Source: Mobula hypostoma
Lineage: Eukaryota
Assembly: GCF_963921235.1 (NCBI RefSeq)
Contig: NC_086118.1
Coordinates: 41,292,001 to 41,356,000, forward strand
Length of the DNA stretch: 64,000 nt
Direction: 5' to 3'
Position numbers and translations under genes: made by a program. Below the pieces are notes generated by a model. The model worked only from the letters and a program-made list of their open reading frames with translations. It was not told where the DNA came from and made no database searches. This document shows positions 1 through 30,600 of this stretch, piece after piece (positions within the stretch are counted from its first letter, which is position 1; each line of letters opens with the position of its first letter).

Positions 1-139
1 CCACTGCCCTACCTTCATCTCCTCATCTATTCTTTGGTATTTCTCTGATATTCGTTACCATTCAGCAGTTACCTTGCTAAATGAACATTCCACATACCAC
101 ATGAAGTGGCACTAATTGCAGGGAGGCACAGGAAAAGGT

Positions 140-380: not shown

Positions 381-598
381 GGTCTTAGGCAGGCACAGTG
401 CAGGATTTTTATGCTTTTGTAAGGAAGTCACAAGCTACTTTTTTGCCTAGTTTACATTCAAGGTATTTTCAGATGCAGAGTATTTCAGTTTTAAAATTAT
501 TTTTAAAATGCTTCATACAGAGAAGGTTTAACAAAAAGAAATTTTGTTGTTCTTGCTTAATTTCCAAAGTAACTTCCACTTTGTGTGTTTCTGTCCAG

Positions 599-633
599 AT
601 TGTAAATGTGGTGAAGCAATTCCAGTGGGTGAG
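599..633 (+). CDS. RNF213: RNF213 exon a (RZ finger N-half): [12 protein letters not shown]
   Basis: tccag|AT...GAG|gtaagg, 35 nt. Aligns without gaps to human TCPNGHPCSVGE. Confidence 0.85.
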
Positions 634-3600
634 GTAAGGATCTGCACAATTGCTAATCTATTGCATTAGATTAGCATGTTGTACAAAATTTAGTAATGTT
701 TAACTTGCACAAATAATATCTTGCATTTCCTGTAGCCACTTCATTGCATCAGTATTAAAATATTAACTGATTATTTGCAACTTGTAGCTTTAATTTAATA
801 GTGACACCATGTGTGCTGTACTTCGGCACAGGTTAGGTATTAGCTTGACATTGACTGGTTATGGAACATGGTTTCTCTTTGTACTCTTCCTTGAAGGCAC
901 ACTTGAGCAGGATGGAATTTTTCAGAGTTTGGGAGATTAATGGTAAAATTTCATCAAGGGCAAGAATTCAAGCATTTCTCCTTTACATTTCATGTATATT
1001 GGTCTTTTTACTTTGCTCACAAGGTGCTGACTAGGCCGACATTTATCGTCTATCCTCAAATGACCTTGAACTAGATGATTTGCATTTATGTACCTGGAGT
1101 TATGTGTAGGTCAGATTAGCTAACAACGGTAGACTTCCCCTCTCTTGATGGGAAATCTTTAACCACAACCTATTATCTTGTGGTTACGATTCCTGATCCC
1201 ACCTTTTCACTCCTAACTTAAGTATTTAATGATTTGAATTTCTCAGTTGCTGTTTTGCAATTTGACCACACTCTCCAAATTAGTTGTCCAGGTTGTCAGT
1301 TTTAGGCATCTGGTGTCATGATTGTAAATCGACTTGGCCTGATTTACATAGAGCTCACTCTAAGCGCTAAGGAATTTAGCCTGGAACAAGTCCCCCAAGA
1401 TTATGCTAGTTTTGTGTTAATAGTTTCTCTCTATGGCCACAAGCTGCAAGTTACAAGCAGCATAAGTCTGAGAAGCATAAGAGAGCAAGGATCACTGTTG
1501 CCCAGTAGACCGTGCCAGTTTTGAGGTCTTGATCTTCAATCCCCTGAGAACATGCTTGAGCAGCAAGGAATGATCCTTTTCCTCTGGAGGCCTAACATTG
1601 AGCTGGTGCAATGGAGTCAATGGTAAATTTTAGTATCAGTTTCTGTCTTTGTTGAAAGATGATTCTGAGGTATGAGAAATAGTTCATTTTTATCAGGACC
1701 TTGCTGTGAAACCTTACTATTAGAAAGTGCCTTTCAATGGAGGCAGTTTGGTAAGAATTTGTGAATTGCAAATGTTGCGACTGTTGTTTATTTAATATTT
1801 CAGTAATATTATTTTGAGTAATATTGTAAATATATTGTTTGATGAAGCGTTCTGTTGTTTACATAATTCATTTTGAGTTGTATATAAAAGTATGTGAATG
1901 GCATTTGTTATTACGCCACCACATCATAAGTGCATGCTGCAGTAAAGTAAAACGAGGAGTAGACGCGTCATCCCTGGCTCCATGTTTTTTTTTGATTAAT
2001 TTTATGTTTCGGAGTTCGTTTTATGTAAATCCAAAACATAACAGTGACGACTGACATGAGCCACATCGAAGCTCTTGCTGGGAAAATCTATGTCTCTTCT
2101 CTTCACACGTCGTTTTATATTTTTTTCAAAGCAGGCAATAAACGATCAACTACAGGCTTAATAGCTATAATTACACGCTTATCTTTACAATTTAAATATA
2201 GACTGGTAATTTTTATTACTCTATCCTGGCCATCTCACTCTCGGCCGTGACATGGGGTTTCGACCAGAAACATCAACAATTTATTTTCTCCCACCAGTGC
2301 TGCATGGCTCATTGAGTTCCTCCGACTGTGCGGAACATGCATCGAATTACATATTTATAATGGGAGCACATCATAAATGTCACTCTTCTGACTATTGACA
2401 AGGAATGAATAGTCTATAATGATGGGAGCGGGTTGGCACTGGCCTTCTTGGAAGAAAAGAGCAGACTGAAGAACACCCTTCACGTACAAGAGACACTAAT
2501 GGCTACGAGAGGGAACCCTAACTCAAATGATTAGGGTAACCCTAACCCAGCCCAACTAGCAGAACCCATTTAAATATTCAAATACCAATTTGTTACAGTG
2601 TATATAGCACAGAACATTACAGCACAGTACATGGGGAAAAAGCAGGTAGGTGGAGATGAGTCCATGGTCAGATCAGCCGTGATCTTAATGAATGACGGAG
2701 CAGCCTCGATGGGCTAGGTGGCCTACTCCTGCTCCTATTTTTTATGTACAGGCCCTTCAGCCCGCACTGTTGTGCCAACCTTTTAACCTACTCCTAGAAC
2801 AATCTAATGCTTCTCTCCCACAGGCCCCTCCATTTTTTTCAGCCATGTGTGGTGTAGAGAGATGGCTTCCTGAATATCCATCTTGCCAATTACAGTCAGA
2901 ATATCTCATGCCTAATGATAGGTTTGGGCCTTGCCGTACTGAGAGGCCCACACATGTCACGGCTGTCAGTGAGTTGCTGGACCTCCTGTACTCTTTATGT
3001 GCACCATCCGTTTCTTCAGTCACAAGTTTTCAGTTGGACCTCTGTTTCAGGTGCCTATAAATGCTTTTTTTATGTCTTGAAGCATGATTTCAATACTGGA
3101 TTCCTGACGTTTGCAGTTAATTAGTTGCTGGATCCCCCGTCATTCCCATCAAATCCACCCTAGTTTTTCTTCTAATCTAGTAACTAAATCACCATCCCAC
3201 CATATCCAGAGTGCTGGCTCTAGTTCAGCACCCATAGATCTAGCCTATGAATTAAATTTTTCCTTCCCCCCCCCAATGCCTCCTCATGGTCCAGCACCTA
3301 CACTGGCATCCCCACCCACTATACTACATCACTTTTCAATAAGTTTAGTAGTGGCATGGTAGCGTAGTGGTTAGCGCAGCGCTTCACAGTACCGGCGACC
3401 CAGGTTCAATTCCCGCCACTGCCTGTAAAGAGTTTGTACGTTCTCCTCATGACTACGTGGGTTTCCTCCAGGTGCTCTGGTTTCCTCCCACAGTCCAAAG
3501 ACAGACTGTTTGGCAGATTAATTGGTCATTGTAAATTTCCTGTGATAAGGCTAGGATTAAATCCAGAAATTGCTGGGTGGCGTGGCTCGAAGGGCCTGAA

Positions 3601-6600
3601 GGGCCTATTCCACTCTGTATCTCAATAAACAATAGAACGGTTGTAGTACTAGTTGTAAAAGTTGTAAACTAGTTAACAACTTTACTAGTAAAGTTGCTGC
3701 CGTAAGGCACCATTGGCCTGGGTTCAGTGTTAGTGAACTGTCTACATGTTCTCCCTGTGAGCACATAGATTTCCTCCTGGAGAAAAGACATGAAGGTTTT
3801 TAGGTTAATTGGCCACTGTATTATGTGAGGTTATCCAATTTGAACNNNNNNNNNNNNNNNNNNNNNNNNNNNNNNNNNNNNNNNNNNNNNNNNNNNNNNN
3901 NNNNNNNNNNNNNNNNNNNNNNNNNNNNNNNNNNNNNNNNNNNNNNNNNNNNNNNNNNNNNNNNNNNNNNNNNNNNNNNNNNNNNNNNNNNNNNNNNNTT
4001 GATATGCTTGTGTGTGTGAGAGAATTTTCCCCCTTTTGTCACAATTGGTATTAAATGTCCAACTCTTTGACCATATACCCACCCAGACCTGCTACATAGC
4101 CAAGAATCCTTCCTGGCAACTTGTCTTCAACTATCACCTTCCAGCTAACCTCCTTCCCCCTACTTTTTTATTCTGGCATTCTCCTTTACAGTCCTGAAGA
4201 AGAGTCTCGGCCCAAAACGTTGACAGTTTATTCATTTTCATAGATGCTGTTTGACCTGTTGAGTTCCTCCAGCATTTTGTGTGTGTTGCTTTGGATTTCC
4301 AACATCCGCAGAATTTCTTGTGTTTGTCATAATGAATTGTTGTCAAACAGCCTTAACCAAGATTTTCACCCTATTGCTGACAGTGTCCAACCTCTCTCTT
4401 TCTTTGAATGTGCCACAGTAATGTTTTCTCCTGGCTGCTTATGAGTGATCGTCACGTTAATAAATGTAGCCTCATTGTTCTGGTGAACAGAGTCAAGCTG
4501 ATCAATAATAATGCAATTGTTTGATTGACAGTGTGGGAGACCCATGGTGCTTGCTCGATGTCCCAACTGCCAAGCACCGGTTGGTGGAATGTATCACACA
4601 CCTACTGCTGGATTTACAAGATCAATGAGGTATGTAACATTTACAATCAGGTTAACTTTGCAGCTGGTTTGCAAACTGCCCAGTGCAAATGGTGGTTCTG
4701 CTGACTCAGGACTGCTTTTTAAAGGCATAGAATGACATGTAAGTACTTAACATGATATGAACCCTAACTGTAACTGGTGGGGGAAGATCACAGACAAGTA
4801 TGTGACCTGGGCAGCACATTAGCGTAACGCTTGACTGAGCCGCCGACCCGGGTTCATTTCCTGCCGCTCCCTGTGAGGATTTTGTACGTTATCCCCATAA
4901 TTACGTGGGTTTTCTCCGGATGCCCTGATTTCCTCCCACATTCCAAAGACATACAGGCTAGTATGTTAATTCAGACATCCCACCCTGCAAAAACTCATTT
5001 CAGGGAGGTCGCACCATCAATTTGCGGGAGACTCCCGGAACTTCCGGGAGAGGTGGAATGTCTGCAATAGAGTAGCTCCTTAGCAGCTAGCCAGCTAGTT
5101 TAAATAACGTTAGCTATGCTAATGAACGAATGACACCTGTTAAACTCACCTCAACATGTCTTTTACAGTCTTAACCCACCATGGGCAATAGAAAAGTCAC
5201 TGTTGCAAACAGTGCAGCGAGCAACACTGTCATTATTTTTGACCCCTATTAGACAGGGGTACACTTTAGTGTAGTCTGGGGTGACGTACGATTCATATTT
5301 TCTTTTTTTGGAACACTCTCGCTTTTGTTCTTGCTCTTGCTCTCTCTCGCGCGCGCGCTCTCTCGCTCGTGGTCGCTCTCACTCGCATTCGCCCTCTTGC
5401 GCTTGCTTTCTTGCTCGCGCGCGCTTGCTTTCTCGCTCTCGCACTCTCGTCACTTACTCGCGCTCGCTCTCTCACGCTTGCTTTCTTGCTCTCGCTCTCT
5501 TGTGGTCGCTCTCACTCGCTCTCTCTCGCTGTCATTCACGCTCGCTGTCTCGCGCTTGCTTTCTTGCTCTTGTGCTCGCTCTCTCACTCTTTCTCGCGCG
5601 TTCTCACGCTCACTCTCAAAAATTAAAAAGCAAACATCAATTGGGCTCCCAGCCACCACATGCCTAACTAGTTTCAGTTGGCTCTCCATTGGGACAATGT
5701 AGTCAGAAATGGTGGAGAAAATCCTGCTGAAAAGAAAGTGTTCCCGTGTTCAATAGAAGGCAAAGGAGGTGGCACCAAAACCTTCATCAGCTAGGCCTGT
5801 AAGGAGCTGAACTCTAATCTTTACCAGGTCGCTCTCTCTGCAGTCTGTTGTTGTAAAAGATGGTCCTCATTGGCATCTGTGACCTCTAAAAACTTCAAGG
5901 AAGTTCACACAAGTGATTGTATTGGTTTTGAGGTTATTGTAGTCCTCACTGTCAGAGACCTTGCCTCAGGGTCCTTTCTGGGCCTGCTGATGCTTTTTTT
6001 CCCCAAATATATTCTTATATGTACGGTACAACCAAGATTTGTCATTTTCTTTGTTCATTGTACCAAGCAATTTAACTCATTCACTGACAACACGTCAACA
6101 TCACTGACAGTTCACCCTTCAGCACTGCACCAGGGAAGCATTTGAAAAGCTGGTCTCTAGATTGTTGTCTATCCCCATGAGCCTTTGCAGTAGTTGTACA
6201 GAGCCTTAGTGGTCTGTCAGTACATTCTCCTGTGCCAGTTGACAGTACCGGATACGATAGGGTCTTTCAAGAGTCCTGGATAGGTACATGGAGCTTAGAA
6301 AAATAGGGGGCACAGTGAGTGGTGCAAGTGAAATGCCATCATCATTATATGACATGGGCAATCACGGTCTTATCCATAACTATCATTGTTCTTGGCAAAT
6401 TTTTCTACAAAGTTGGTTGGCCCATTGCCTTCTTCTGGGCAGTGTCTTTACCAGGAGGGTGACCCCAGCCATTATCAATACTCGTCAGAGGTTGTCTGCC
6501 TGGCATCAGTGGTCGCATAACCAGGACTTGTGATGTGCACCATCTGCTCAGGTGACCATCCACCTACACCCATGGCTTTTCATGATCCTGATCAGGGGGC

Positions 6601-9600: not shown

Positions 9601-12600
9601 TCTTGACTCAACCAGCTTATGTTTCCTTTCTAGTCCCCAAGGTCAAATTGAGACTGGTCATATCTTGGGACGTGCCTCATGGAGAGGTCAAGTTGTTGCC
9701 CCTGATCGACAGATGTCTCCTATTGCTTTCCTGTTAATGCGAATTCTGACACATGTATCAATGATGCTTGGAACAGTTCAACATCGTCAGGTAACTTGGC
9801 CCTTCTCTTCAATGCTAACCCCTTGGCGCCTGAAACTGAGACAGATTTAGGAGCATTCTTGATCCTTGGCAGGTTTGGCAGCTGGCAAAGCGAACTACCG
9901 GATTTTGTCTTGCTGTTTTGTGGGCGGGGCTTATCCTGACCCCCATGACCTATTATCTCATTCAAGGTCCTTCGGCTGCACAGACCCCAGCCTTGAGGAT
10001 CAGGTCAGTACCTACCGGAAAACAGACAAACGATCTTCAAACGAGTATTCTGTCCAGCAATTTTGGGTATAAACAGAACTGGTTTATTAGAATGTCACTC
10101 TTTTGGATTCTGTTCATGGTCCTTTATAAAGAAAATAGTTCCTGCCCCCACTAAAAGTATACTATCATGAATTTCTCATAAAATCATCAAGTCCTACCCT
10201 ACAGAAACAAGCCCTTCGATCCACTTTGGCCACCAAGCACCCATTTTATTCTCCCAGATAACCACCCACTTGGGCCAAGTTATCTGCTAACCAGCACATT
10301 TTTGACGTTGTGGGAGGTGACCATGTCGCCAGGAGGAAATGTCACGAGGAGGAAAAGGAAGGTCTGTTTAGTCAGCATCAGGTGTCAGAATCAAACCCGG
10401 GCTGTTATCTGTGCCACTCTGTATGAATGGGCTGTGCTCAGATATTGATGTTCTTATTCCCAGGACTTTAAGGTTAAACTATCTTGTACAATATCTTTAA
10501 ATTCAATTATGTGAGGTCACAGTGGAACTGCATGAGAGCAACTTGGATGATGTGTAGCTCGGGTGGTTGATGCTTGGGTTGAGTTATTCTCCAATTTTGG
10601 CAATTTACTTGCAAACATTCAGTAACCATGCAAGGAGACTTCATCAGTGTGCTGTTGATTGGGTGTGTCCTCCAAATGCTTGGACTTTATATCTAAATAC
10701 TTTTATATACTTATACATGTCCAATCAGCTGATTGATAAGTATATAAAGGCCAAGCATTTGGAGGACGCACCACAGTCGACAGCGCACTGATGAGGTCCC
10801 CTTGCATGGTTACTGAACGTTTGCAAGTAAACTGCCAAGATCAGAGAACAGCTGAACTTAACCATGTGTGAGAGTGGTAGGGGTCTTCAACAGTCCACCT
10901 TAATATTGTGGATTGTGTTGATTTAAAGCTGATATGCAGAATCAGCATCAGACGCGCTCTGCTAACTGTATATGGCAATCAATGCTTAGTCTGGGATCCA
11001 TTTTAAATTTGAGGTTGATGTATTTCTAATCTCACAGAATGGTAGAACCCAACCAGAACTGTTGTCATTTGGCATTAAATGGAAGTGAATTTAGGGTCGG
11101 GCAAGTTCATTTTCAAAAGCACAGATCCCAGATTTCACGCTCAAATGGGAATCTCTCAGTTTGGTCTGCTGCTAAGGTTCAGCAAGTTTCACCTTGCTGA
11201 GGATCTCCGACAGTTCTCAAGAGCCTCAGCTGGAGGTTCGGCCTAGAACAGAACCTACATCCTCTCTGGATTTCATTGGCAATTGTTGGGGTGTAAATAT
11301 AAAATGGGATAGAGGAGGCCTCTTGTTCAGCTTGCTTTAATAAAGTGTTGTATTGTAGTATTTTTGTTTATTTCTTAAATGAATAAAATTTTTACTTATT
11401 TCTTTCTATTTTAATTTTAGAATATCTGAATATCAAAGATGTGTAAATTAACTGTTAACACTTACAACGTTTTTAGCCAGTAAAAGTAGGAAGAGAGCTT
11501 TTTTGGATGCCAAATCACTTGGTACGGCTTTTGGAGCAGAACTTAATTGCCAAAATCCTGCTGTTGCTTAGCCCAATCAGTCAGGGTTTAGGACACTTCA
11601 AGCCACTAAGTAGTCTCCCTGCAAGGGAATTCTGTAAGCAGCAATCCAGGCAAGGGCACCAGACCAATTCCATTTTGTATAAAATAGAAGTGGCCTTCTT
11701 CTAACTACCTTTGCAGATGATCGCACAAATGGTTACACCATTGGTGTCAAATGTGTCGGAGTTCTTGTGGGACCACCTGGAAAAAGACATGGACCAACTC
11801 GGAAAGTCACTGGGAAAGAACATTGACGATGTAGCCACCTGCATTCATCTGGTCATCGATCAACTGCTGAATGAGCCTCAAGGTAACAGTGAGAGGACTT
11901 GTGCTGAAGTCCCCATAGGATTGTACTGAGTTTCATGTCAAGACAATGGAACAAGTGTCCACTTCTTACTTTAGGATTTCTGGAAAGGGACTTGTTCTAC
12001 GTTGAGCTCTTTACTCGAGTGTCATTGTGTTTATTTTGTTGTTTAATTTACACAAATGAAGGTTATATGCAATATATCTTAATTTCAGTTTATGTTAACT
12101 TATGTTTGTCTTCAGTTTGTACCCTCCTGCAGCTGGAGAAAGTTAATTTAAGCCTTGTGTATGTGTTCCTGTGACAACAATAGCTAAACTTGAACTTTAA
12201 GTTATCAGTTGAATATATTGGGTACCAGAGGCATGTCAATAGCCTTGAAACCAACTAAGTAAACCTTTTGAAATATCTCCATTTGTGTCATTTAGTTGCT
12301 TTTTGGGCTTTTGATGGTATTTTATGCAATATTGGTAATATCCAGTTTAATCATTTTCTCACAAGTTAAAAAAATATTGAAAAAGTAAAAGATTTGAGTA
12401 AAAGTAAGACATTAGCATCCCTTGGAAGGATAAGATGAGATGCGGCAACACCCAGTCCCAACAATATTTGCGAAGGCATTGGGCGAATCCAAGATGCGTG
12501 GACCTTTGATGCTGGGATGGGAGGAAGGGAAGGTGAATCAGATTCAGGTTCATTATCACTGACTTATGTCATGCAGTTTGTTGTTTTGTTGCAGCAGTAC

Positions 12601-15600
12601 AGGCCAAAATATAAAAACACTATAAATTACAATAAGCAATATACCTATGAAATAAATAAATTGTGCAAAAAGAGGGTAAAAATAGTGAGGTGCTGTTCAT
12701 GGATTCATGGACCATTCAGAAATCTGAAGGAGGAAGGGAAGAAGCTGTTCCTAAAATATTAAGTGTGTGTCTTCAGGCTTCTGTACCTCCATCCTGATGA
12801 TAGCCATGAGAAGTGGGTGATGGGGGTCCTTAATGATAGATGCCACCTTTTGACGGTGTCCTGGGGAGACTAATGCCCATATGGAGCTGGCTGAATTTAC
12901 AACTTTCTGTAACTTTTGCCAATCCAATGCATGCACCAGATGGGGATGCAAGTAGTCAGAATGCTCTCCATCATAGATCTATAGAAATTTGCTAGTCTTT
13001 GAGGAGTCTTTAATCTCCTCAGACCCCTCATGAAGTATAGCTGCTGATGTGCCTTCTTTGTAATTAATTCAATATGTCTGGCCAAGGATAGATTTTCAGA
13101 GTTGTTGACACCCAAGAACTTGAAAGTGCACACCGTTTCATAAAGCGCTGACCCCTTGAGGAGAACTGATGTGCGTTCCATCAACTTGACCTTCCTGAAA
13201 TACACAATTAATTCCTCGGTCTTGCACTAAGTGCAATTTATTGTTGCAGCACCAGTCACCAATCTATCTCACACTTGTGAGGTGCAGGTCGGTCTGAGAT
13301 ATAGCTTACAGAGGAAGATTCCCTGATGGGACTTATTATCAAAAAGGTTAAATCCCATTGCAGTTCTCCTCCCTCAACAGCTCACCTGCAGGAAAAGGTT
13401 TATGAATCTCAGCCATTGCCGCATTTCCCTGACACAGGTCCTCAAGTAAGAGGTGGGCAGGTGTTCCAACTTGAAGCTGGCCACGATTGTTTGGCAAGTT
13501 CAGACCTGAGTTGCTTGTGGAGCTGTCACTGTAGTCGTGAAGTAGTTTAACCTGGCAAAACACGTCTTGTTTGTGTCAGCTGAGAAAATGTATTTTGATT
13601 CATTCAGGCATGACTCGATGGGCTGAATGGACTAATTACTGTCCCATTCTGGTTCTTTGATTCATACAATGCATTTACTGCAATATTCTTCTGAATCTTA
13701 AATCAGCCTTTCAAAAGTACATAATTTATATCCTGTGTTTCAGCAAGGCTGCAGTTTAATGTGCCCATTGTAGTTATATATATTTGTTCTCAAAAAAACT
13801 TCAGATGTAACTATCCCTTTTTAAATAGGAAAAAATGGGTTTAATGTGATTCATTTTCAGTCAATAGAGATGCAGGTATCAGTCTATAGTAACTGCTGGC
13901 GAAAGTGGCGGATGTGGGTTCGATTACAACATTGAAGAGAAGTTTGGATAAGTGGATGGGAGGGTTATGGAGGGCTATGGTCCAGGTGCAAGTCAATGGA
14001 ACTAGGCAGTGTAACAGTTTGGTATGAACTAGAATAGTGGTCGCCAACCTTTTTAAGCCCAAGATCCCCTACCTCGGCATTAGTGAAAGGCAAGGTCGAC
14101 CTACTAAATCGTTTAGTCACACGCATGCGCACCAGGCAGAAAAGACCAGCAGGAAAACCCCGCAGCCCGGAAGCAACCTCTCTTTACAAACAGGTTTCCG
14201 TAGCGGGAGTATTGCTATATTACCATTATCTTAATTAGTATTACTTATTTTTATAATGCTTACATTACAACACCTCTAATTCTATGTTTCATTATTTAAT
14301 TTTATTTCAACTCAAAAAATAAATGAATAAAAATTGACTGTTGCACTCAGTGTAATGACTGGGGCTGAATACTTTCTGCTAGTTCCCTGAAATTTGGCTC
14401 ATAACTACAGCCAGCCAGTCTGAGAGAGTGTGTGAGGTGTCTGTCAGTAAGACAGCTCCTGTACTTAGATTTCATAATTTTCATCGGTTGCAGCACAGCG
14501 CCCTCGCAAACCACCTGACAGACTGAATATTTGAATGGACAGTTTCCTTTGTTAGACTGAATGTTGAATCTGCCACGATTTTCAGGTATTTTGTATTGGT
14601 AAACTGTTACTGAGACACTAGTATAAGTTTCAGTGGTACGCAAGATAATGACACCACTGTTTTTTGTTTCCCAGTTATTTACATTTGGGGAATGCTGGAA
14701 TTTAAAGGGGGAGAAGTGTTGTCATGTGAGCATTATAAAGATAAGTTAATACAAATTAGGATAATGGTAATATAGCACTACTCCCGCTATGGAAAGCTGT
14801 TTGTAAAGAGAAATTACTTCCGGGTTGCAGGGTTTTACTTCCGGTCTTTTCTACCGCGGTGCATAGTGGGGGAGCTATACACACACGCTCTCTGGGCAGA
14901 AAAAAACAGAACTAAAACCCTGCAACCCGGAAACAATCTCTCTTTACAAACAGCTTTCAGTGGCGAGAGTGTTGTTATATTACCATTATCCTAATTAATA
15001 TTACTTACTTTTATAATGCTCACATTACAACGGTATTTGTGTATTTATTTTTCATTCTTTTTCGGGAACTACTGGTAAAGTCTCAAAGATCAACCGGTCG
15101 ATCATGATCGACCAGTTGGTGACCACTGGACTAGAATATCCAATGGCCAGTTTCTGTGTTGGAATGCCCTATGACGCTATAGCATACAGAACAAACTTGA
15201 AACTAAATTATAAACTCGGTGACTTTTTTCCCAGGACAAACAGCAAAGTGGACTGAATCCCTATCATCAAAGGAAGCTAGAAATGCCTGGGAGAGCCAGT
15301 TCATCAAGACTATTATTTCTCCACTGTTAGAGGTTAGTTAAGTTAAACAATGAAAAAATTCTTTCTAATGCCTAGATCGTGTACATGTGTCCATTAATAC
15401 AACTCAGTTTTCATCATTCAGAATTACACTCATTGCCCACTTTATTAGGCACCTCCAATATGTAATAAAGTGGCCAGTGAATATATTCTGTACGTTTGTG
15501 GTCTTTTGCTGCTGTAGCCCATCCACTTCAAGGTTCGTTGTGCTGTGCATTCAGAGATGCTCTTCTGCACACCACTGTTGTAACGCATGGTTATTTGAGT

Positions 15601-18600
15601 TACTGTCTCCTTCCTGTCAGCTTGAACCAGTCTGGCCATTCTCCTCTGACCTCTCTCAATAACAAGGCATTTTCACTCACAGAAGGGCCACTCACTGGAT
15701 GATTTCTTTTTTGCACTATTCTCTGTAAATTCTAGAGACTGTTGTGTGTGGATGAAGTACAGGTAGCAACATCAACCAATTTATTGGATTCATCATACAC
15801 AGGAAACTGTTAAAGAGTATTTCAAAGCAAACGTGAGAAGGAGTGGGGAAAAATGGTGAGAACAGACCACGATCATAGAAAGATGCTCTTTGAGTGCAGA
15901 GTTAACTATTTCAAACCACTCATCAGTTACCTATATACTTAAACTAACTATTCTATCATTGCTTAATTAACTTTAGCATATTATTAACTGGCACAGTAGC
16001 ATAGTGGAGAGCACAACAGCGAATAGGTTTCAATACCTGCTGCCGTCTGTAAAGAGTTTGCATGTTCTGTCTGCATGGATTTCCACCGGGTGCTCCTGTT
16101 TCATCCCACAGTCTAAAGACATACTTGTTGGTAGGTTACTTGGTCTTTGTAAATTGCCCCGTGGTGAAAACGGGGGCTGATGGATGGAGCAGCTTGAAGG
16201 ACTGGGAGGGCTTATTCGGCCCTGTGTCTCACTGAATAGACCTTGTCCGTAACCCAGGCTGTCGATTCGATCTCAGCTTCGTCATCTGATCTAGGCTGCT
16301 GTGTTAGTGCAGTACCGTGTGAGGTGGTGCTGTTTTGGTCAGTGTGAATCTGAATCAGGTTTATTATCACTGTCTTACATGCAGTGACATTTGTTGTGCG
16401 GCAGCAGTACAGTGCTCTACATAAAATTACCATTCATTACAAAATGAATAAATACTACAATAAAAAGGAATAATGAGGTAGTTTTCAGAGGTTCATGGAC
16501 TATTCAGAAATCGGATAACAGGGGAAGAGCATTAATTAACAGTGTTAAGCTGAGCACAAACAAGAGAAAATCTGCAGATACTGGAAATCCAAGCAACACG
16601 CACAAAATGCTGGAGCAATTCAGCAGGCCAGGCAGCATCTATGGAAAAGAGTACAGTAGACGTTTCGGGCCAAGACCCTTCAACACCTTGCCCTGAAGCG
16701 TCGACTGTACTCTTTTCCATAAATGCTGCCTGTCCTGCTGAGATCCTTCAGCATTTTGTGAGTGGTAAACTGAGGCTCTGTCCAGTCTGTAAAAAGGACA
16801 TAAAAAATACAGTTGCAAAATTAGAAAAGCTTCCAAACCATAATCCATCAACCAGCATCTCTTAAACAAAATATTTAGACATTTCTCTCATCAAAGTTTG
16901 CAAGACCTTGCTGTTTAAAAATTAGCAGTCTCGTTGATCTTTGATTTAACGTTGGCTAAGTTTTGTTTTTAATTTGTTGTGAAGAACTCAGATGTTCTGA
17001 AAACAATAATGGCACTAAATTAACTCAAGCTCTTTATTTTTGCCTCTCCGAGACTTACTGGCCAGAACATGCTACTTATGAGATCCTCCACAAATTGGTT
17101 TTGAGTTATCCAGCGTTCATGATTAAAATTATTTAGATCATCATTTTTTTGGGCAATTTTCTCTTTAAAATATCAGTCTAGATTTTCTGGTTGGTATGTT
17201 GCCCATGCTCACCCATGGAAAAGGTCCCGTGTTTAAATTTGTGAATGCCCCGAGGTCAATCTGCTGTCCCAGACTAGGCTGAGTCCCTGAGCACATGTTG
17301 TGATGTAGGTGACCGATGTGGGAGCCAGTAACAGCTTCCCATAAAACATTTATAAAAGCTTAGCCAGGTAACTAGAACCTCGCTTGTTTCGCAGTATGCT
17401 TGGTCAAATAGTGTGCAGCTTAGCATGCTGTGTGGAAGATTATGATGTGGAAGACAGCCTAATAATTTCTATTGCCTTTACACAATAATTAAATGTAACT
17501 TTTCATTCTGAATGAGTCAGACAAAGCACGTCTGAGCTAAGATTACTAGTGAGTTTTGAAAATTCAATGTGACTTCTAAAAATTCTACTCCATTAGCAGT
17601 AATGGATAACAGTGTATCCTACCTTCTCTCCCTAAGAATATTTGCTGATGAACATTTAAGTTACTGAATATATAAAGTGGGAAGTGTTCCTCTGTTCTTC
17701 TCATCTCCAGAATCTTGACAAAAAGTTGCCAGAAGTAGCCAAGCAGATGAGTTCTGATGACAGAATCGGTGGGAGTCCAATTGTTAAAATGCTGTACGGG
17801 GACCCATCGGATTTGCTGACCTTTCCTCGTAACATTCTGGATTGTTCCTCTGCCTGGAAGTGTCAGCGCCGAACATGTATCGAGACCTTCACTCACGTTG
17901 TCGAGCAAAAAGGTGGGAAGAAACTGACACCAATTCTGTGGCAATTTCTTCAAAAGGTAACTGAAGTGCTTTTTCGCTCATTTAATCACTAAGGGAGAAC
18001 AAAACAATAACAAAGCGTTTAATAAATTGACTTTTAAGTGCCAAAGTGGTAGAATATGTCAGAAACTTTTCTCGCCCTTGAAGGACTGCAACACATCAGC
18101 CTCACTGCACAGTCTTCAAGTCAGATACTACTGTCACTATAAACGTACCGCTACTCAATCATCTTCGGTTAGTTCCCCAACCACCAGCATTGTGTGGGAT
18201 TACTGACACTTTCACCACTAAGAGTGGGTGATAATATTGCCCTTGCTAGCTCAGCATATATCCTGTAAAGTAGATTAAGTAAATATTATTTGTCCAAATC
18301 CAGTGTTTAAAAGTCCTACTGGTTCTACACTTTGTAATCATTGTCTGTTTGTTGGTGCTCCCTAGCACTCCAGCTGAGATAATTGACACATTAGCATAAT
18401 TGAATCTCTCATCATCTTAAAAACCTCAAAGGTTCAAAGGTACAATCTAATGTCAGAGAAATGTATACAATATACATCCTGTAATGTCTTTTCTTCATGA
18501 AAACGGGAGTGCCCATCATTTTGGAAATACTTAAAATGGAAAAGATGACCTACTCTCGTGAGAATTCAAAAGGAAAAATTTTATCAAATTTGGAATAAAT

Positions 18601-21600: not shown

Positions 21601-24600
21601 TGTAGTCTTTGATTGATTCTATTGTGTTTCTTTATATCTATTGTGAATACCTGCAAGAAAATGAATCACAGAATAGTAAACACGAGGAAATCTGCAGATG
21701 CTGGAATTTCAAGCAACACACAAAAGAGTTGCTGGTGAACGCTGCAGGTCAGGCAGCATCTCTAGGAAGAGGTACAATCGACGTCTCTGCCCGAAACGTC
21801 GACTCTACCTCTTCCTAGAGATGCTGCCTGGCCTGCTGTGTTCACCAGCAACTTTTTTGTGTCTTCACAGAATAGTACATGTGTCATACTTAGATAGTAA
21901 ATTTACTTCAAACTTCAAACATTTTACTTGAGAGAATTCTCAGATTGGACTTTCAGTTGTTGCAAAGTTTAAACAAATGAGTGAATTTTGTGAGATTAAT
22001 AACGTGCTGTTGTTAAGTACCAGGTCTGACAAAATTGATGCACAGATTATACCATGCTTTGGTCTATTTTGTGACGCTCATTAAATCTTCCCAAAGTCAA
22101 ATTCACAGTGTTCCACAAAGTCAGCTGAAATGAACGAATTCAATATCCATCAGGTAGTTAGATGATCTGCTTGACCATTTGTTCTGTATTTATTCTGAGT
22201 AGCATGGTACTTCCACCAATTGGTAGAGAGCAGCAAGATGGGGAAAATACACTCATAGCTTAAGGTAACTTGTTAGCACAGCTAATATTTCGTAAGAATC
22301 CTCAAACCCCGCCCCCCTTTGAAACCTGTCATCACATGAATTTTCACAGAAGCCCGGGAGTTTTAGGGCCAGCATCTCCATCACGGGCCGGCACAGTAGC
22401 ATTAGCAGTTAGCGTACTGCTTTTGCAGTGGGGTTCACTCCCCGCTGCTGTCTGTAAGGAGATTGTCCATTCTCCCCGTGACCTGCACGGCTTTCCCCAG
22501 GTGCTCCAGTTTGCTCCCACATTCCAAAGGCATACACTTAGGGTTAGCGAGTTGTGGGCATGCTATCTTGGCATTGGCAGCACGGCAATATTTGCGGACT
22601 GCCTGGCACGTGGTCATTGATTTGATTTGACACAAATGGTGCATTTTACTCTATGTCTTGACATTTTGATGTACATGTGACAAATAAAGTTAATCTTAAT
22701 CTAATCACTGAGCCATTTTTATTACAAAACATATTTAATTACCTGAAATAATATTACAAAAGACATTTGAGAATGTATCGGGTTCTTTGGTCAGTGCCAC
22801 AGAATGTCTAAACTGATAACAATAACAGTACGACTCTGAATTTGATATATGTCTTGGCTGTTGTTTTATAGGAGCGTTATATCAAGATGCTTAAGTATTT
22901 GCCTGACCTTGTTGAGCTTCAGTATGAGTTAATCAGGAAACTCCAATGCAGCTCAAATGTGAAATCGAAGACAATTTCCCAATTTCTTCAACAATTTCCT
23001 TCAGGTAAGAGATTCTTGATTTTATTTTTAATGCTCGCAATATTGATCTGCAATCTAGTATTACTGACATGTCACACAGGGTACGCTGTGCAATAGATTG
23101 TTGGAGTAACCTTTTGCTTGACTAATCTGCAAGATGGCAGTCTGTGAAATACAGTCACTGGAAAGCATGGAGTAGATGTCTGGGGTGATTCATTGTGAAC
23201 GCAGTAGTGCTATTAAAAACCTGTCTAAAGACACAAAGATTATTTTTATGTTTCTAGGTCAACAAGGTCATAAGCACAACTTTGAGAAACGGATCGAGAT
23301 TTTCTTACAGCTGTGGAATGAGCTGCGACTGTTGCTGGAAAAAAATAGTGAGTGTGTTGTAGCTATTGGCTCCACTTTATTCTGGGTTTCTTTCTTTTGG
23401 ATTCATGCTGGGTGGTGACACTCTTCCTGACTTGCTGAGGCATCTGACCAAATTCAACAGTGGCCTTCAGTTAGCCAGGGCACCAGGGATTCCAGAATTC
23501 TCTGTGCACCTACGTTAATCCAACAAGTGTTGGCTCATGCTCTAAGCATTTGACTAGATACTATAACTAGATACATTTCTGACATTAAGTCCTCTTCTAT
23601 CACACAACTTGGCTCAAGCTTTGCTTAGTCCTGTTGAAGACAAACTAATCTACACTCAACCAACGCACATAAAAGTTGCGCGTTCACCAGCAACTTTTAT
23701 GTGTGTTGCTTGAAATTCCAGCATCTGCAGATTTCCTCGTGTTTGCGTTTTTAATCTACACTCACTTTATTAGGTCCACCTGTACACCCGCTCAATGAAA
23801 ATATTTAAACAGCCAATCATGTGGTGGCAACTCAGGGCATAAGAGCTTGCAGACAGGTCAGGAGGTTCAGTCGTTGTCCAGACCAAACATCAGAATGCTG
23901 AAGAGGATCCATGAATGCACAATATGTCGAATCTGAAGTGGATCTGCTACAACAGCAAAAGACCAAATGGGTCCACTCCTGGACCTAATAAAGTGGTTCT
24001 GAGTGTACTGTATGCCCACACTGTCACACCGTGTGTATTTATCACTGATCAAGTTGTACTTTTAAATGTTTTTCAGACCCAGCGATTCCAAAACAAGTGT
24101 GTCAGGATTTGACTTTTGAGAGTCCCATCGAAGTTCTGTTGCCCCAACAACAGGGTCTGGGGCTTTGTGCCACTGAGCTAACCAAGTTCCTCATTGAGGT
24201 TCAAAATAATATCATTGAGGCTATTAGTGAGCGTAAAAAGTAAGTACTTTCCTGCTTTGGTTTCATGTGAATGCTTTAAGGACAATGCGAAGTCAAGCCC
24301 CACACCTTCCGCCCATCACCCCCATGAGTGAATCTATATGATATTAGTCTGCTTCAATGCCTACTGAGTGTTTCCCAGAGAGTGCATCAGTCAACATACT
24401 TTACTAGACCAAATTCTAATGACTGCTGTCCAGTGAATTAAATGGGATCCCTGAGCTGAACGTTAGCTCTGTTCATCACATGTACATTACATTAAAAAAA
24501 GTCAAGTTTATTTTCATTTCACTATATACATGTATACCATCAAACGAGACAGCATTTCTCCGGACAAGGGTGTAAAGCTCAATCGTACACATAACACAAA

Positions 24601-27600
24601 ATAACTTGGGAAAGTAAGGATAAAATCTACAGATGAATTACACACAAAAAAAAACAAAGTAAAGTGCATAAAAACCAGAGACACCACACACCCCGGCCAC
24701 TCCCTGTTTGACCCGCTGCTGTCCAGCAAAAGGTTCAGGACACTAAACGTCAGAACAAATAGACTGAGGAACAGCTTCTATCCCAGAGCTGTGGCCTCCA
24801 TCACACCACTCCCACAGAACAATGACTGAAACTGTGAGCACACACATCCACACACAAGGATTCAAATACTTGCACTAACGGCACTTTGTGCATTACTGTG
24901 AAATTCTGCTCTTGCTGCAACTTATTTTCTGTTACTTATCTATTTAATACTGTTTTTCTATTACTGTCTTGTTTTTATCCACCGCTTTATTTAATTGGCT
25001 GAGAGGAAGCCAAACAGAGTTTCATTGTACCTATGTATAATGACAGTAAAGATCATTCAATTCAATTAAATGTTGTAAGGTACAGAACAGATTAACCGGT
25101 GACACTTCGAATGCGATACAGCAGGGAGTTCAGAAGTCTAATGGCCTGAGGGAAGAAACTGTTTCCCATCCTGACCGGTCTTGTTTTTATGCCTCGGAGT
25201 CTGCTTCCTGATGGTGGAAAGTCAAAGAGGATGCTGGATGGATGGGTGGGATCCTTAATAGTACTAAAGACCCTGCGAACATAGTGGTAGTGATAAATGT
25301 CTCCGATGGTATGGAGACCCCTATGATCCTCTCAGCTGTTCTCGCGGTCCGTTGTGGGGACTTCCAGTCCAATGCTCGGCTGCTCCCATACCAGTTGGAG
25401 ATTCAGCTTGGTGAGGACACTCCAATGGTGCTCCTGTAAAACGCAGTTACGACGGTTGCAGGGGAGCCTCGCTTGCCTCAGTCTCCTTAGGAAATGGAGG
25501 TGCTGCTGTGCTGCCCTGTTCAGGGAGGTGATATTGAGGGACCAGGTGAGGTCATCCGTGATGTGAACGATGCACTTAACTCTCTCTACGGAGGAGCCAT
25601 ACATTTGCAGAGGGGGGTGGTTACAGTGAAATGCTTCTATATGCACCAAATCAAATCAGTGAGGATTGTACCGGAAATGTTGCCATATTTCCAGCGTCAA
25701 CATAGCGTACCCAGAACTCACTGACTGTAATCCATATGTCATTGGAATGTGCGAGGAAGCCAGAACGCCTGTAGGAAAGCCACATGATCAGGAGGGAAAA
25801 ATGAATAAAGTCCCTGCAAACAGTGGTGGGAATGAAACCACACTTGGTGCTGTGAAACATAGCACTTGGTGCTAACCGCAAGAGGCATCCGGTGTCCAGT
25901 TCTTCCAGGACTCCTACACATGTGTGTTAGGCATGGAAGTCAGAGTTGAGCAGGAGGCCGGGTGCCAGGGCAACCGACTGACTGCGGCCTGATGGTGGAG
26001 CACGATGTGCTGAAGAGAGAGACAGGATATACCAATATACAGGCGGGAGCCACAGAGAGCAAGTCCAGCCACTGGGATCTGCCCAGGATAATATGACCTG
26101 TTGCTTTTCATCAACATTATCATTTGTATTTAGGAGTGAAAAATAAATGGATAATTTACAGTTTCTTATATTTCCTGGTAGACTGACCATCAACCCAGAG
26201 GCACTATTAGATGCACATTTAATTCTCTGCGACCCTGACAAAGACTTCATCCCACTCGTCCTGTCAAACTGCCAGTACACCCTGGAGAAAGGGCAGGAGA
26301 CATTACCAGAGTACGATATCAGAAACATTGAGAAGCAGCTGATACGACAGTACCTGAAAGGGAAACCTACAATCGTTCATTCGGTAAGCTTGTTTTTGAA
26401 TGAGGTTTCTGTTCAACTTGGAGGCTCTGATCTAATTTATGTTCACATTTTCCCATTACAGAAGATTCCCAAATTTGTGGCCAGGCGAGAAAGAAATTAT
26501 TCAACCATCTTTCAGGAGCTGAAGACAAAAATACCTCAGGTATTTATTTTGCTCTAGCAAAACCAGTTTTGCAATCTGGATGCAAGATGGTAGAATTGCA
26601 AGAATTAAATGACTTAATCCATTAAGGCCTTGGTGAGACCACACCTGGAGTATTGTGTGCAGTTTTGATCCTCTAATCTGAGGAAAGACATCCTTGCCAT
26701 AGAGGGAGTACAAAGAAGGTTCACCAGATTGATTCCTGGGATGGCAGGACTTTCATATGAAGAAAGGCTGGATCGACTAGGCTTATACTCGCTGGAATTT
26801 AGAAGATTGAGGGGGGATCTTATTGAAACATATAAAATTCTAAAGTGATTGGACAGGCTAGATGCTGGAAGATTGTTCCCAATGTTGGGGAAGTCCAGAA
26901 TGAGGGGTCACAGTTTAAGGATAAAGGGGAAGCCTTTTAGGATCGAGATGAGGAAAAACTTCTTCACACAGAGAGTGATGAATCTGTAGAATTCTCTGCC
27001 ACAGGAAACAGTTGAGGCCAGTTCATTGGCTATATTTAAGAGGGAGTTAGATATGGCCCTTGTCACTAAAGGGATCAGGGGGTATGGAGAGAAAGCAGGT
27101 ACAGGGTTCTGAGTTGGATGATCAGCTATGATCATACTGAATGGCGGTGCAGGCTCAAAGGGCCGAATGGCCTACTCCTGCACCTATTTTCTATGTTTCT
27201 ATTATTTGCAAGTCAAGGTAGATAGTCTGTAGATTTCTTTATGGTGCAACTGCTTTACTGCACTGTCTAATGGTTTGTTCTCACTGCCACTGATTGGCAA
27301 GAGCTCAGCATGTGAGTATATTACCAGCCAATTAGGTGTGCAGTATGTTTGGTTACATGCAGGGTGATGCAATTGGCACAGCTGCTATCTCTTGAGCAAA
27401 TACTCTACCCCATAGAACTTTGCAGGTGGACAGATACTTCATCTACAAAGACCTCCTGGAACAGAGGGAGGGAAATGGGTTACGTTCTTGGAGTCAAATT
27501 GGGTCACCTATGATCTCATTGGATGGTGCAGCAGTATAGAGGGGCCAACTGACCTACACAGGCAAAACCTTCCCCATCACATTCACAAGGAGCGTTGCCA

Positions 27601-30600
27601 CAAGAACACGGCATCCGTATTCAAGGACTCCCTTCATCCAGGTCATGCTCTCTTCTTGCTACAGCCATCGGGCAGGAGGTCCAGGAGCCTTAAATCCCAC
27701 ACCACCAGGTTCAGGAACAGTTATTAACCTACAACCATCAGGCTCCTGAACCAGTGTAGCTCGCCTCACTCACCTCAACTCTGAAATGATTCCACAACCT
27801 ACAGACTCACTTTCAAGGACTCGACATCTCAATATTATTTATTTACTTTTTTTAATTTGCACAGTTTGCCTTCTTTTGCACGTTGGTTGCTTGTCAGTCT
27901 GTGTTACTCATAGGTTTTCATATATTCTGTTGTATTTCTTTATTTTTCTGTGAATGACTGCAAGAAAACATGGTTGGTATATGGAGCCATATACATACTT
28001 TGATAGTAAATTTGCTTTGAACTTTGAACTTTACTCCTGCTCTTGTATTGTAATGTCTTTCAGTTTATTCACGTTTGTGTCATGACAGAACATTCTCAAT
28101 TCTTCTTCTTGTACCATGGAGTAAAATGCAGCTCTCTTTTAGGGAACTTGTGAGCCCTCATGTCAGTCATGGTTAATGAATTCATCCTCACCCTGCTCCG
28201 ACTTACAGAGGGACAGTGCAGATGACAGCCCCACTTCCCGTCTAGCCCTAGTTCTGGCAACTGGATCCTTCCCATATTTCCTGCATGTGCAAACAGATCC
28301 CAGCCCTTGCTCTCCCTCTGATTATTGGTGGTGGTGTTTAGCCAGTGAGTTTATCCATGACAATAAGTTGCTTGCTGTGCAGCATGAAAGTGGGCTTTCA
28401 GCACCATATCAACACCTTAACTATTCTATCTTTGTAGTTCAATGATTCCAATATGGATACATTTTATAACCATAGAGTGATTTACTTATTGAGATACAGT
28501 GCGGAATCGGCCCTTCCGGCCATTCGAGCCATGCTGCCCAGCAAACCCCTGATTTAATTGGAGCCGATAATTTACAATCACCAATTAACCTAACAACCGG
28601 CACATGTTTGGACTGTGGGAGGAAACCAGATCACCCGGAGGAAATCCATGCAATCGTGGGCAGAGCGTTCAAACTCCTTACAGGCAGTGGCAGGAATTGA
28701 ACCCGGGTCGCCAGTACTGTAAAGCGTTGAGCGAAGGACTACGCCACCGTGCCGCCCTTACAGAGCAGTACAGCAGAGAAACAAGTCCTTTTGTCCGTCT
28801 AGTCCATGCCAAACTGTTACTCTGCCTAGTCCCGTCAACCTGCACCTGGACTACAGCACCCCTCCCCATACCCCTCCCATCCATGTACTTGCTCAAACAC
28901 CTCTTAAATTTTGCAGTCGAACCCACATCCACCACTTCCGCTGGCAGCTCATTCCACACTCCCACCACCCTCCGAGTGAAGAAACTTCGCCTCAAATATT
29001 TCACCTTTCACCCTTAACTTCTGACCTCTAGTTCTAGTCTTACCTAACCTCAGTGGGAAAAGCTTGCTTGTATTTTCCCAGTCTATAATTTTGAATATCT
29101 CTGTCGACTCTCCCCTTGTTCTCCCGCGGTCCAGGGAATAAAGTCCTAACCTATTCTATTACTCAGGTCTTCAAGTCCTGGCAAAATCCTTGTAAATTTT
29201 CTCAGTACTCTTTCAGTCTTAGTGTTAATTCCATTGTTTAAATCTTTACCTATCTAAGGTAAACTGACATACATTAACGGTGCACATATTCTGAAATACA
29301 AGCGATTCTGCAGTTGCTGGAAATCCAGAGTAACACACACAAAATGCTGGAGGAACTCAGCAGATAGGATGCCATCTATGGAAAGAAATAAGCGGTCTAC
29401 ATTTTGGACCAAGACCGTTCATCAGGACTGGAAAGGAAGGGGGAGGAAGCCAGAATAAGATGGTGGGAAAGGGGAAGGAGTACAAGCTGGCAGGTGATAG
29501 GTGAAGCCAGGGGAGATGGGTGGGGATAAAGTGAGAAGCTGGGAGGTGATAGGTAGAGAAGGTAAAGGGCTAAGGAAGAAGGAATCTGATAGGAGAGTGG
29601 AAATGTTGTGGAGTCACAAAACCAATCAGAATGATCGCACTATACTGATCAAGCTAACATGGCACACATCTGTTTCTTTTGCTTTTCTTGTTATTCTGCT
29701 TTTAATTGCTCTGCTCTTCTTGGGTATAGTATTCCCAATTGCTGTATTGTCAGCATTCTTACCATATGGACTGGATGTAAGTACTGCATTGCATATCCTG
29801 CAGACCTCTTCCATTCTTATCCTCCAGATCAAGAACAAACATCTACTCACTGTACACTTAAGAGTTCCTTTAATTTCATTAAAAATAAATTAAATAGAGA
29901 ATATTAATCCTTATTTTCCTTTGTGTTCAGGAAATACTGTCACCTTCCCTCAGCACTGCAGTGACGGCATCATTTAAGTCCTATAGTGACATCTGTGATG
30001 CTCTGGATATCATTGAGATTGTCGTTGGATTCCTCGCGACCGCAGGAGGAGCCCATGATTACCAGCTTCTTACCTATCTCAAAGAAACCCTACGGATGGA
30101 TCGTCGAGTCTTAGCCTGTGTCAGCAAGGTCAGTGCTCAAGGTTACTGTTGCAGTTGCTATGCGGAAAACACTGAAGCTCCAAGACAGACACAATGTTTG
30201 CCTTTTTGTCTTTAAATTGTCAGAATCAGAATCAGGTTTAATATCACTGGCATTTGTTGTGAAATGTGTGAGCTTAGCGGCAGCGGTACAGTGCAATACA
30301 TAATATGGAAAAAATAATCAATTATATTTATTATATATATGTATATTAAATAATTACATTAAAATAGTGTAAAAACAGATATAATAAAAGTGAATTTAAA
30401 CGGACGCAGTATATCACCCCAGTCGACTGGGAGACCGCTTTGCTGAACACCTACGCTCTGTCCGCCAGAGAAAGCAGGATCTCCCAGTGGCCACACATTT
30501 TAATTCCACATCCCATTCCCATTCTGACATGTCTATCCACGGCCTCCTCTACTGTAAAGATGAAGCCACACTCAGGTTGGAGGAACAACACCTTATATTC

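What the first reader, a model, noticed from the sequence alone, without database searches (positions are those of the whole stretch)
599..4629. RNF213 with a non-canonical RZ finger: CKCGE replaces CPNGH, while the catalytic Cys/His are kept
Seen: the spliced sequence reads [12 protein letters not shown]|[22 protein letters not shown] and aligns without gaps to human C4505-PNG-H4509-PCSVGE-C4516-...-C4525-xx-C4528-...-H4537. Known: C4505, H4509, C4525 and C4528 bind zinc; C4516 is the transthiolation cysteine, assisted by H4537; H4509 is required for RING-independent ubiquitylation of bacterial LPS. Here the H4509 position is Glu, a new Cys sits two residues after the first, and the C4516/H4537 equivalents are intact. 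The downstream 690 aa are stop-free. Inference: this is a functional C4-type (CxC...CxxC) RZ variant, possibly a paralog with altered substrate or E2 use, rather than a dead domain.
Basis: partly seen in the sequence, partly recalled or inferred. Interest (0 to 1): 0.75.

Follow-up and report, generated by a model that had tools for sequence, protein, structure and literature searches.

The report
Ray RNF213-beta with rewired zinc finger
This is the 3' end of a ray's second RNF213 immune ubiquitin-ligase gene, whose catalytic RZ zinc finger has swapped its zinc-binding histidine for a nearby cysteine, a change that is transcribed and shared by every shark and ray protein examined but whose biochemistry is untested.

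Summary
Exons 599-633 and 4532-4629 are flanked by AG/GT. Spliced transcript contigs from three runs join them exactly (633->4532, GT..AG). Together they score 47.1 bits against Pfam's RZ finger model (cut-off 27). The N gap at 3846-3998 lies inside the skipped intron, so it does not touch the reading frame.

Thirteen more exons, all AG/GT, continue the frame to a TGA at 47779-47781. That gives 691 residues with no stop, 96% identical to a Mobula birostris protein.

The C-x-C-G-E motif is not private to this assembly. All 12 shark and ray orthologues examined carry C-x-C-G-[E/Q]. The chimaera orthologue, ray-finned-fish rnf213-beta, and the second (alpha-type) RNF213 of the same sharks and rays keep C-x-N-G-H.

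Four positions switch together:
- N4507 -> C
- H4509 -> E/Q
- C4511 -> I/V/F
- D/E4527 -> non-acidic

C4505, C4516, C4525, C4528 and H4537 never change.

The best reading is a functional Cys4 zinc site, inferred from conservation alone. Zinc binding and ligase activity were not tested, and structure prediction was uninformative. The proteins are already in databases under automatic names; I found no paper describing the variant.

The parts
599..633 (+). 35-nt micro-exon. It holds the last two bases of a split codon and then [11 protein letters not shown], the first zinc knuckle of the RZ finger with C-x-C-G-E in place of C-x-N-G-H.
   Evidence: AG/GT borders. Spliced to 4532 in contigs of 3 runs. 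tblastn with Mobula P0078 gives 11/12 identical.
634..4531 (+). Intron of 3898 nt. It contains the assembly gap 3846-3998 and highly repeated SINE-like elements.
   Evidence: Skipped with GT..AG ends in transcripts. Gap located. Depth spikes at 3440-3596 and 4225-4381.
4532..4629 (+). Exon with the catalytic Cys (human C4516 equivalent), CPNC (C4525/C4528 equivalents) and the general-base His (H4537 equivalent).
9634..9790 (+). C-terminal domain exon 3
   Evidence: tblastn to P0078/P0002; AG/GT borders.
11717..11882 (+). C-terminal domain exon 4
15235..15332 (+). C-terminal domain exon 5
17711..17956 (+). C-terminal domain exon 6
   Evidence: PDB phmmer gives 82 bits to mouse and human RNF213. 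Also.
22872..23004 (+). C-terminal domain exon 7
23258..23347 (+). C-terminal domain exon 8
24077..24239 (+). C-terminal domain exon 9
26182..26383 (+). C-terminal domain exon 10
26462..26539 (+). C-terminal domain exon 11
29931..30128 (+). C-terminal domain exon 12
37224..37313 (+). C-terminal domain exon 13
44784..44962 (+). C-terminal domain exon 14. The second assembly gap, 43784-43988, lies in the intron before it.
47637..47781 (+). Last coding exon, ending in TGA at 47779-47781.

Best explanation
The window holds the last 15 coding exons of a ray's rnf213-beta-type gene. This is the second RNF213 paralogue of jawed fishes, and NCBI labels its shark and ray orthologues 'rnf213-alpha-like'.

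Its RZ finger is a genuine, transcribed variant conserved across elasmobranchs. On the elasmobranch stem, after the split from chimaeras, the zinc site was rewired at four positions: N4507 became Cys, the zinc-binding H4509 became Glu or Gln, C4511 became a hydrophobic residue, and the acidic residue inside C4525-x-[D/E]-C4528 was lost.

The most likely mechanism is that zinc is now held by four cysteines, C4505, the new C4507, C4525 and C4528. This would keep the beta-sandwich fold that presents the unchanged C4516/H4537 dyad for E2-to-E3 transthiolation and transfer to substrate.

Shown: the exons, the splicing, the paralogy, the conservation pattern and the co-variation. Inferred: Cys4 coordination, retained ligase activity, and the idea that the lost acidic residue was a second-shell partner of the lost histidine.
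For: - Splice joint 633->4532 in three runs.
- Pfam RZ model at 47.1 bits.
- 15 intact AG/GT exons, 691 aa with no stop, 96% identical to Mobula P0078.
- All 12 elasmobranch orthologues read WYxCxCG[E/Q]. Chimaera P0082 reads CSNGH...CPDC, and rnf213-beta of sturgeon, pike and surfperch is canonical.
- In a tree built without the motif columns, beta plus chondrichthyan clade separates from alpha plus tetrapod with SH-aLRT 100, and the variant needs one change on the tree.
- Column counts in the variant clade: 4507 is C in 13/13; 4509 is E in 11 and Q in 2; 4511 is I/F/V in 13/13; 4527 is never acidic. In 115 distinct canonical cores, 4527 is D/E in 115 and 4511 is C in 113.
- C4505, C4516, G4517, P4519, C4525, C4528, GG4533-4 and H4537 are invariant over a clade tree length of 1.66 substitutions per site. 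At the mean rate, six sites would all stay unchanged by chance with probability about 5e-5.
- Literature: mutating any one of the four mouse zinc ligands abolishes metal binding and autoubiquitination, while C4457 (human C4511) is dispensable (PMC12075652). H4509A and C4516S are dead in cells (PMC11549300). A lineage that lost the histidine yet conserves everything else therefore needs a replacement ligand.
- From general knowledge: ligand pairs one residue apart on the same zinc are standard in RING domains (C3-x-H4).
Against: - There is no direct evidence of zinc binding or activity.
- AlphaFold2 models were low-confidence for both the variant (pLDDT 55.9) and the human control (50.2), so geometry could not be assessed.
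- Glu is present in 11 of 13 sequences and could itself bind zinc.
- In this clade the non-ligand RZ positions evolve faster than the rest of the C-terminus, which could also reflect partial relaxation.
- dN/dS could not be computed because no coding DNA of the orthologues was available.
- The RNA status of the runs is a guess by the tool, although GT..AG-spliced contigs of up to 9.3 kb are hard to explain as DNA.
Confidence: 0.7

Rival explanations
1. Glu/Gln at the old histidine position is the fourth zinc ligand, giving a Cys3-Glu site. The new cysteine would then serve another purpose, such as redox sensing or a second, relay-type nucleophile.
For: Glu occupies the position in 11 of 13 sequences. 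From general knowledge, carboxylates do bind zinc in some proteins.
Against: Two lineages, Heptranchias and Pristiophorus, carry Gln, a poor zinc ligand, while the new Cys is invariant. [quoted passage not shown]
Confidence: 0.12
2. The RZ finger of this paralogue is catalytically dead or no longer binds metal. The protein would work through its RING/AAA parts or as a scaffold, and the conserved residues would be kept for structural reasons only.
For: The histidine whose mutation kills human and mouse RNF213 is absent. RZ non-ligand positions evolve faster than the rest of the C-terminus in this clade (10/43 against 14/648, p = 3e-7).
Against: The catalytic Cys-Gly-x-Pro, the His, the three remaining zinc cysteines and the new Cys are invariant in 13 of 13 sequences across sharks and rays. 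The gene is intact and transcribed. A coordinated four-site switch is not what decay looks like.
Confidence: 0.12
3. The micro-exon is a mis-call or an assembly artefact, and the real transcript uses a CxxGH exon hidden elsewhere, for example in the N gap.
For: A 153-N gap lies in the intron. Some database gene models skip this exon (P0001, P0091, P0145, P0149).
Against: Three independent contigs join 633 to 4532 directly. No C..GH peptide exists in the readable 1-4531. Twelve other species' annotated proteins carry the same motif.
Confidence: 0.02

Closest known systems
Human and mouse RNF213 RZ finger (Pfam PF20173; zinc ligands C4505/H4509/C4525/C4528 and catalytic dyad C4516/H4537 in human numbering)
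   Same: The alignment has no gaps. The catalytic C-G-x-P, the CxxC, the GG and the general-base His are the same, as is the position between the E3 shell and the C-terminal domain. The Pfam score is above the cut-off.
   Different: The first knuckle reads C-x-C-G-E instead of C-P-N-G-H. C4511 is replaced by Ile, and the acidic residue inside CxxC is replaced by Asn.
rnf213-beta of ray-finned fishes (Acipenser ruthenus P0083, Esox lucius P0050, Embiotoca jacksoni P0041)
   Same: They are sister to the chondrichthyan clade that contains the window gene (SH-aLRT 100), so this is the same paralogue.
   Different: Their RZ is canonical: CANGH, CMNGH or CAKGH, with CxDC.
Mobula birostris 'rnf213-alpha-like' P0078 and the other elasmobranch orthologues (P0002, P0071-P0081)
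   Same: P0078 is 96% identical over 679 columns and has the identical [11 protein letters not shown] micro-exon peptide. All of them share CxCG[E/Q].
   Different: Ten of the 24 differences from Mobula fall in the 43 RZ residues. The window comes from a different, closely related ray.
ZNFX1 RZ domain (C1849/H1853/C1869/C1872; dyad C1860/H1881)
   Same: Same fold family and same catalytic dyad logic (bioRxiv 10.1101/2025.10.14.682297).
   Different: ZNFX1 keeps the Cys3His site and sits in a helicase rather than in an AAA+/RING giant.

Membership tests
RZ-type zinc finger (Pfam PF20173) | Profile match above the gathering score | tested here: met
   47.1 bits against a cut-off of 27, profile positions 14-54 of 54. 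The first 13 profile positions lie in an exon outside the window.
RZ-type zinc finger (as defined by Otten 2021 and Ahel 2025) | Catalytic Cys/His dyad (human C4516/H4537) | tested here: met
   Both are present in exon 4532-4629 and invariant in all aligned sequences.
RZ-type zinc finger (as defined by Otten 2021 and Ahel 2025) | Cys3His zinc site: C4505, H4509, C4525, C4528 | tested here: not met
   The three cysteines are present. H4509 is Glu here and E/Q across elasmobranchs, and a new invariant Cys sits at 4507. This makes it a variant of the family, not a canonical member.
RZ-type zinc finger | Binds one Zn2+ and supports E2-to-E3 transthiolation | not testable with these tools
   This needs biochemistry. 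The AF2 models were too poor to judge geometry.
RNF213 | C-terminal domain following the RZ finger is homologous to the RNF213 C-terminal domain | tested here: met
   Exon 6 gives 82 bits to mouse and human RNF213 in the PDB. All 15 exons are collinear with RNF213 proteins.
RNF213 | Dynein-like AAA+ core and RING domain upstream | tested here: inconclusive
   These lie outside the window. The orthologues (P0078, P0002 and others; 5100-5600 aa) carry precomputed Pfam AAA (PF00004) and RING (PF00097) hits.
rnf213-beta orthology group | Groups with ray-finned-fish rnf213-beta rather than with rnf213-alpha or tetrapod RNF213 | tested here: met
   IQ-TREE on 692 columns with the motif columns removed gives the bipartition at SH-aLRT 100. 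There is no non-vertebrate outgroup, so the root is not fixed.

The most novel reading that the evidence does not exclude
The elasmobranch rnf213-beta RZ finger is a rebuilt Cys4 active-site module. The change in its zinc site alters metal affinity, redox sensitivity or loop geometry, and its fast-changing loops are under diversifying selection. Together these would give sharks and rays a second RNF213 with a different E2 or substrate range, for example other microbial surface molecules, beside the canonical copy.
Probability: 0.25. Interest if true: 0.65.

Novelty: new variant of a known kind. Interest (0 to 1): 0.5.

Why it matters
The RZ finger is a recently recognised E3 active site. It ubiquitylates bacterial lipid A, and in ZNFX1 it ubiquitylates RNA. 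Its zinc-binding histidine is treated as invariant and essential, since H4509A and the mouse H4455 mutants are dead.

Sharks and rays offer a natural experiment. The histidine was replaced through a coordinated four-residue switch that has been kept since before sharks and rays diverged (by published timetrees, from my own knowledge, a few hundred million years). A canonical copy persists on what appears to be the same chromosome.

This gives concrete, testable mutations for asking what the zinc site contributes to RZ reactivity. It also shows that a 35-nt micro-exon, which several gene models miss, carries the critical ligands.

Tried and rejected
- **Structure prediction.** AlphaFold2 of the Mobula RZ region (96 aa, 24-row alignment) gave pLDDT 55.9. 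The human control with the same rows gave 50.2. Both are too poor to judge the zinc site, so I ran no fold search. The tool returns no coordinates in any case.
- **Protein-complex prediction.** Not run. It cannot score a metal site.
- **tRNA scan.** The tRNA-like repeats in 1-6000 gave no tRNA gene.
- **Upstream exon.** I looked for the exon that should encode ...LPTMPED...WY. It is not in the window.
- **Alternative exon.** I looked for a CxxGH exon in the readable intron and found none.
- **Neighbouring RNF213 copy.** I looked downstream of 47.8 kb and found none.
- **Outgroup.** The coral RNF213-like protein P0156 had no recognisable RZ core under my pattern, so the tree has no outgroup.
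- **Literature.** Searches for rnf213a/b, RNF213 with shark, and RZ finger found no description of this variant. The library lacks most subscription journals, so this is not proof of absence.
Full report
**What is in the sequence**

At 599-633 the + strand reads 'cag|AT TGT AAA TGT GGT GAA GCA ATT CCA GTG GGT GAG|gtaagg'. At 4532-4629 it reads 'cag|TGT GGG AGA CCC ... TCA ATG AG|gtatgt'. These translate to [11 protein letters not shown] and [32 protein letters not shown].

Exon 2 alone finds the RZ finger of mouse and human RNF213 among solved structures (E 2e-4). The joined 43 residues match Pfam ZnF_RZ-type (PF20173) at 47.1 bits against a cut-off of 27, over profile positions 14-54. The first 13 profile positions, and the first base of the split codon, belong to an exon upstream of the window.

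**The gap and the splice**

The assembly gap at 3846-3998 lies between the two exons. I laid contigs of four runs on 300-5000. Three runs, all from one study and from the species whose intron pieces match the window without any difference, each hold a contig with a joint 631->4530. That joint fits equally at 633->4532, with GT..AG ends. The contigs are 9303, 3837 and 971 nt long. The shorter side of the joint is 33+2 = 35 letters, which is exactly the micro-exon.

The tool only guesses that these runs are RNA. A multi-kilobase contig that skips 3898 nt at GT..AG is nonetheless a spliced transcript. The gap is therefore intronic and has no bearing on the frame. No contig crosses it, so genomic continuity there remains unshown.

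No other peptide of the type C..[GN]H or C.C[GN][EQH] exists in any + frame of 1-4531. C.CG[EQ] occurs once on the + strand of the whole window.

**The rest of the gene**

A 110-residue stop-free stretch at 17660-17989 matched RNF213 in the PDB at 82 bits. I used it to fetch full-length relatives.

With the Mobula birostris protein P0078 as guide, tblastn and inspection of the borders gave 15 exons, all AG/GT and all in a consistent phase, ending in TGA at 47779-47781. That is 691 residues from CKCGE with no stop. The second gap, 43784-43988, is also intronic.

The spliced protein is 96% identical to P0078 over 679 columns. The window therefore comes from a ray closely related to Mobula.

**Is the motif private or conserved?**

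Searching with the bamboo-shark relative P0002 and reading the RZ region of every hit gives these first knuckles:
- Chiloscyllium plagiosum, C. punctatum and Hemiscyllium: CSCGE
- Rhincodon: CTCGE
- Heterodontus: CSCGE
- Heptranchias: CICGQ
- Carcharodon: CQCGE
- Scyliorhinus: CSCGE
- Mustelus: CRCGE
- Pristiophorus: CRCGQ
- Mobula: CKCGE
- Pristis: CQCGE
- Amblyraja and Rhinoraja: CRCGE

The chimaera protein of the same clade (Callorhinchus P0082) has CSNGH.

A second search found the other paralogue in the same species: Mustelus, Heterodontus, Heptranchias, Pristiophorus, Chiloscyllium, Stegostoma, Leucoraja, Rhinoraja, Narcine and Mobula. It always carries C[P/Q/K]NGH and CxEC.

Among all proteins fetched, 161 RZ cores are C...H, 16 are C.C.[EQ], and 4 are gene models that skip the micro-exon.

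**Which paralogue**

I built a maximum-likelihood tree of the 692 C-terminal columns with the first 12 columns, which hold the motif, removed. It splits the sequences at SH-aLRT 100 into two groups:
- rnf213-alpha of ray-finned fishes, tetrapod RNF213 and the canonical chondrichthyan copy;
- rnf213-beta of sturgeon, pike and surfperch together with Callorhinchus P0082 and the variant clade.

The variant needs a single change on the tree (support 88). So the gene is the elasmobranch rnf213-beta orthologue, whatever its automatic name says. The switch happened after the split from chimaeras and before sharks and rays diverged. The tree has no non-vertebrate outgroup, so I claim only the bipartition.

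**The pattern of change** (human numbering)

| Position | Variant clade (13 sequences, window included) | 115 distinct canonical cores |
|---|---|---|
| 4507 | C in 13/13 | N in 105 |
| 4509 | E in 11, Q in 2 | H in 115 |
| 4511 | I/F/V in 13/13 | C in 113 |
| 4527 (inside CxxC) | N/H/G/S/T, never acidic | D/E in 115 |

C4505, C4516, G4517, P4519, C4525, C4528, G4533, G4534 and H4537 are invariant everywhere.

The variant clade spans 1.66 substitutions per site. At the mean rate, six given sites would all stay unchanged with probability about 5e-5.

**Mechanism**

Published work shows three things:
- Mutating any one of the four mouse zinc ligands (C4451, H4455, C4471, C4474) abolishes metal binding and autoubiquitination.
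- C4457 (human C4511) is dispensable (PMC12075652).
- H4509A and C4516S are dead in cells (PMC11549300).

A lineage that lost the histidine but has kept every other key residue under strong constraint must have a replacement ligand. The only new, invariant candidate is the cysteine two residues after C4505. Glu is a less likely ligand because two lineages carry Gln.

I therefore read the site as Cys4 (C-x-C ... C-x-x-C), holding the same fold and presenting the unchanged C4516/H4537 dyad. A C-x-ligand pair on one zinc is standard in RING domains (general knowledge).

The simultaneous loss of the otherwise universal acidic residue next to C4528 fits the idea that it was a second-shell partner of the histidine. 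That is my inference and is not shown here.

**What I could not show**

AlphaFold2 gave low-confidence models for the variant (pLDDT 55.9) and for a human control with the same alignment (50.2). Modelling therefore says nothing either way. I made no test of zinc binding, ligase activity or dN/dS.

**A second signal**

In the variant clade the 43 RZ residues change much faster than the remaining roughly 650.
- Window against Mobula: 10/43 against 14/648, Fisher p = 3e-7.
- Five other elasmobranch pairs: p between 0.002 and 0.013.
- Four canonical pairs show no excess: p between 0.6 and 1.

The ten most variable 43-column windows of the whole C-terminus all start within its first 17 columns, over the RZ finger and the linker after it.

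This fits either diversifying selection on the loops or partial relaxation. The pairs are not fully independent, and the excess partly reflects how slowly the rest of the protein evolves in these fishes.

**Novelty**

The proteins are in NCBI and UniProt under automatic names. I found no paper on the variant.

I rate it a new variant of a known kind. It is of moderate interest to people working on RNF213, ZNFX1 and unusual E3 active sites.

Noticed in passing
window 599-4629 compared with P0078 and other elasmobranch orthologues: The 43 RZ residues are the fastest-changing part of the C-terminal 690 aa in the variant clade. Window against Mobula gives 10/43 against 14/648, p = 3e-7. Canonical RNF213 clades show no such excess.
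   Followed up: partly
proteins P0002/P0186, P0072/P0183, P0073/P0184, P0074/P0182, P0076/P0181, P0078/P0193, P0081/P0189, P0082/P0094, P0083/P0202: In nine species, the variant or beta copy and the canonical alpha copy list the same longest-contig length. They probably lie on the same chromosome, which hints at an old linked (tandem?) duplication. I did not check distance or orientation.
   Followed up: no
database names of P0002, P0071-P0081 and P0181: The automatic names conflict with the tree. The beta-type elasmobranch genes are called 'rnf213-alpha-like', and the alpha-type Mustelus gene is called 'rnf213-beta'.
   Followed up: partly
proteins P0001, P0091, P0145, P0149: These gene models jump over the 35-nt micro-exon or mis-call the sequence before CG[RM]P, so they lack the first zinc knuckle. 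The micro-exon is easy for gene predictors to miss.
   Followed up: partly
window 33948-35607 (+), 40667-41680 (+), 41706-42947 (-), 60135-61055 (+): Long ORFs with LINE-type endonuclease (Exo_endo_phos) and reverse transcriptase (RVT_1) domains. They are retrotransposon remnants in RNF213 introns and downstream of the gene.
   Followed up: partly
window 290-390, 3360-3600, 4225-4381, 4830-5000: tRNA-like, SINE-like repeats. Contig depth there reaches 1e4-1e5 in all four runs, so they belong to very abundant, transcribed repeat families. ARAGORN calls no tRNA gene.
   Followed up: partly
window 818-2660 and 4266-4559 in run X1: Contigs of 'organism A' cover unspliced intron and the intron-exon border with about 1.3-4% differences. 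This is a closely related species or divergent population, and the contigs are pre-mRNA or DNA rather than spliced mRNA.
   Followed up: no
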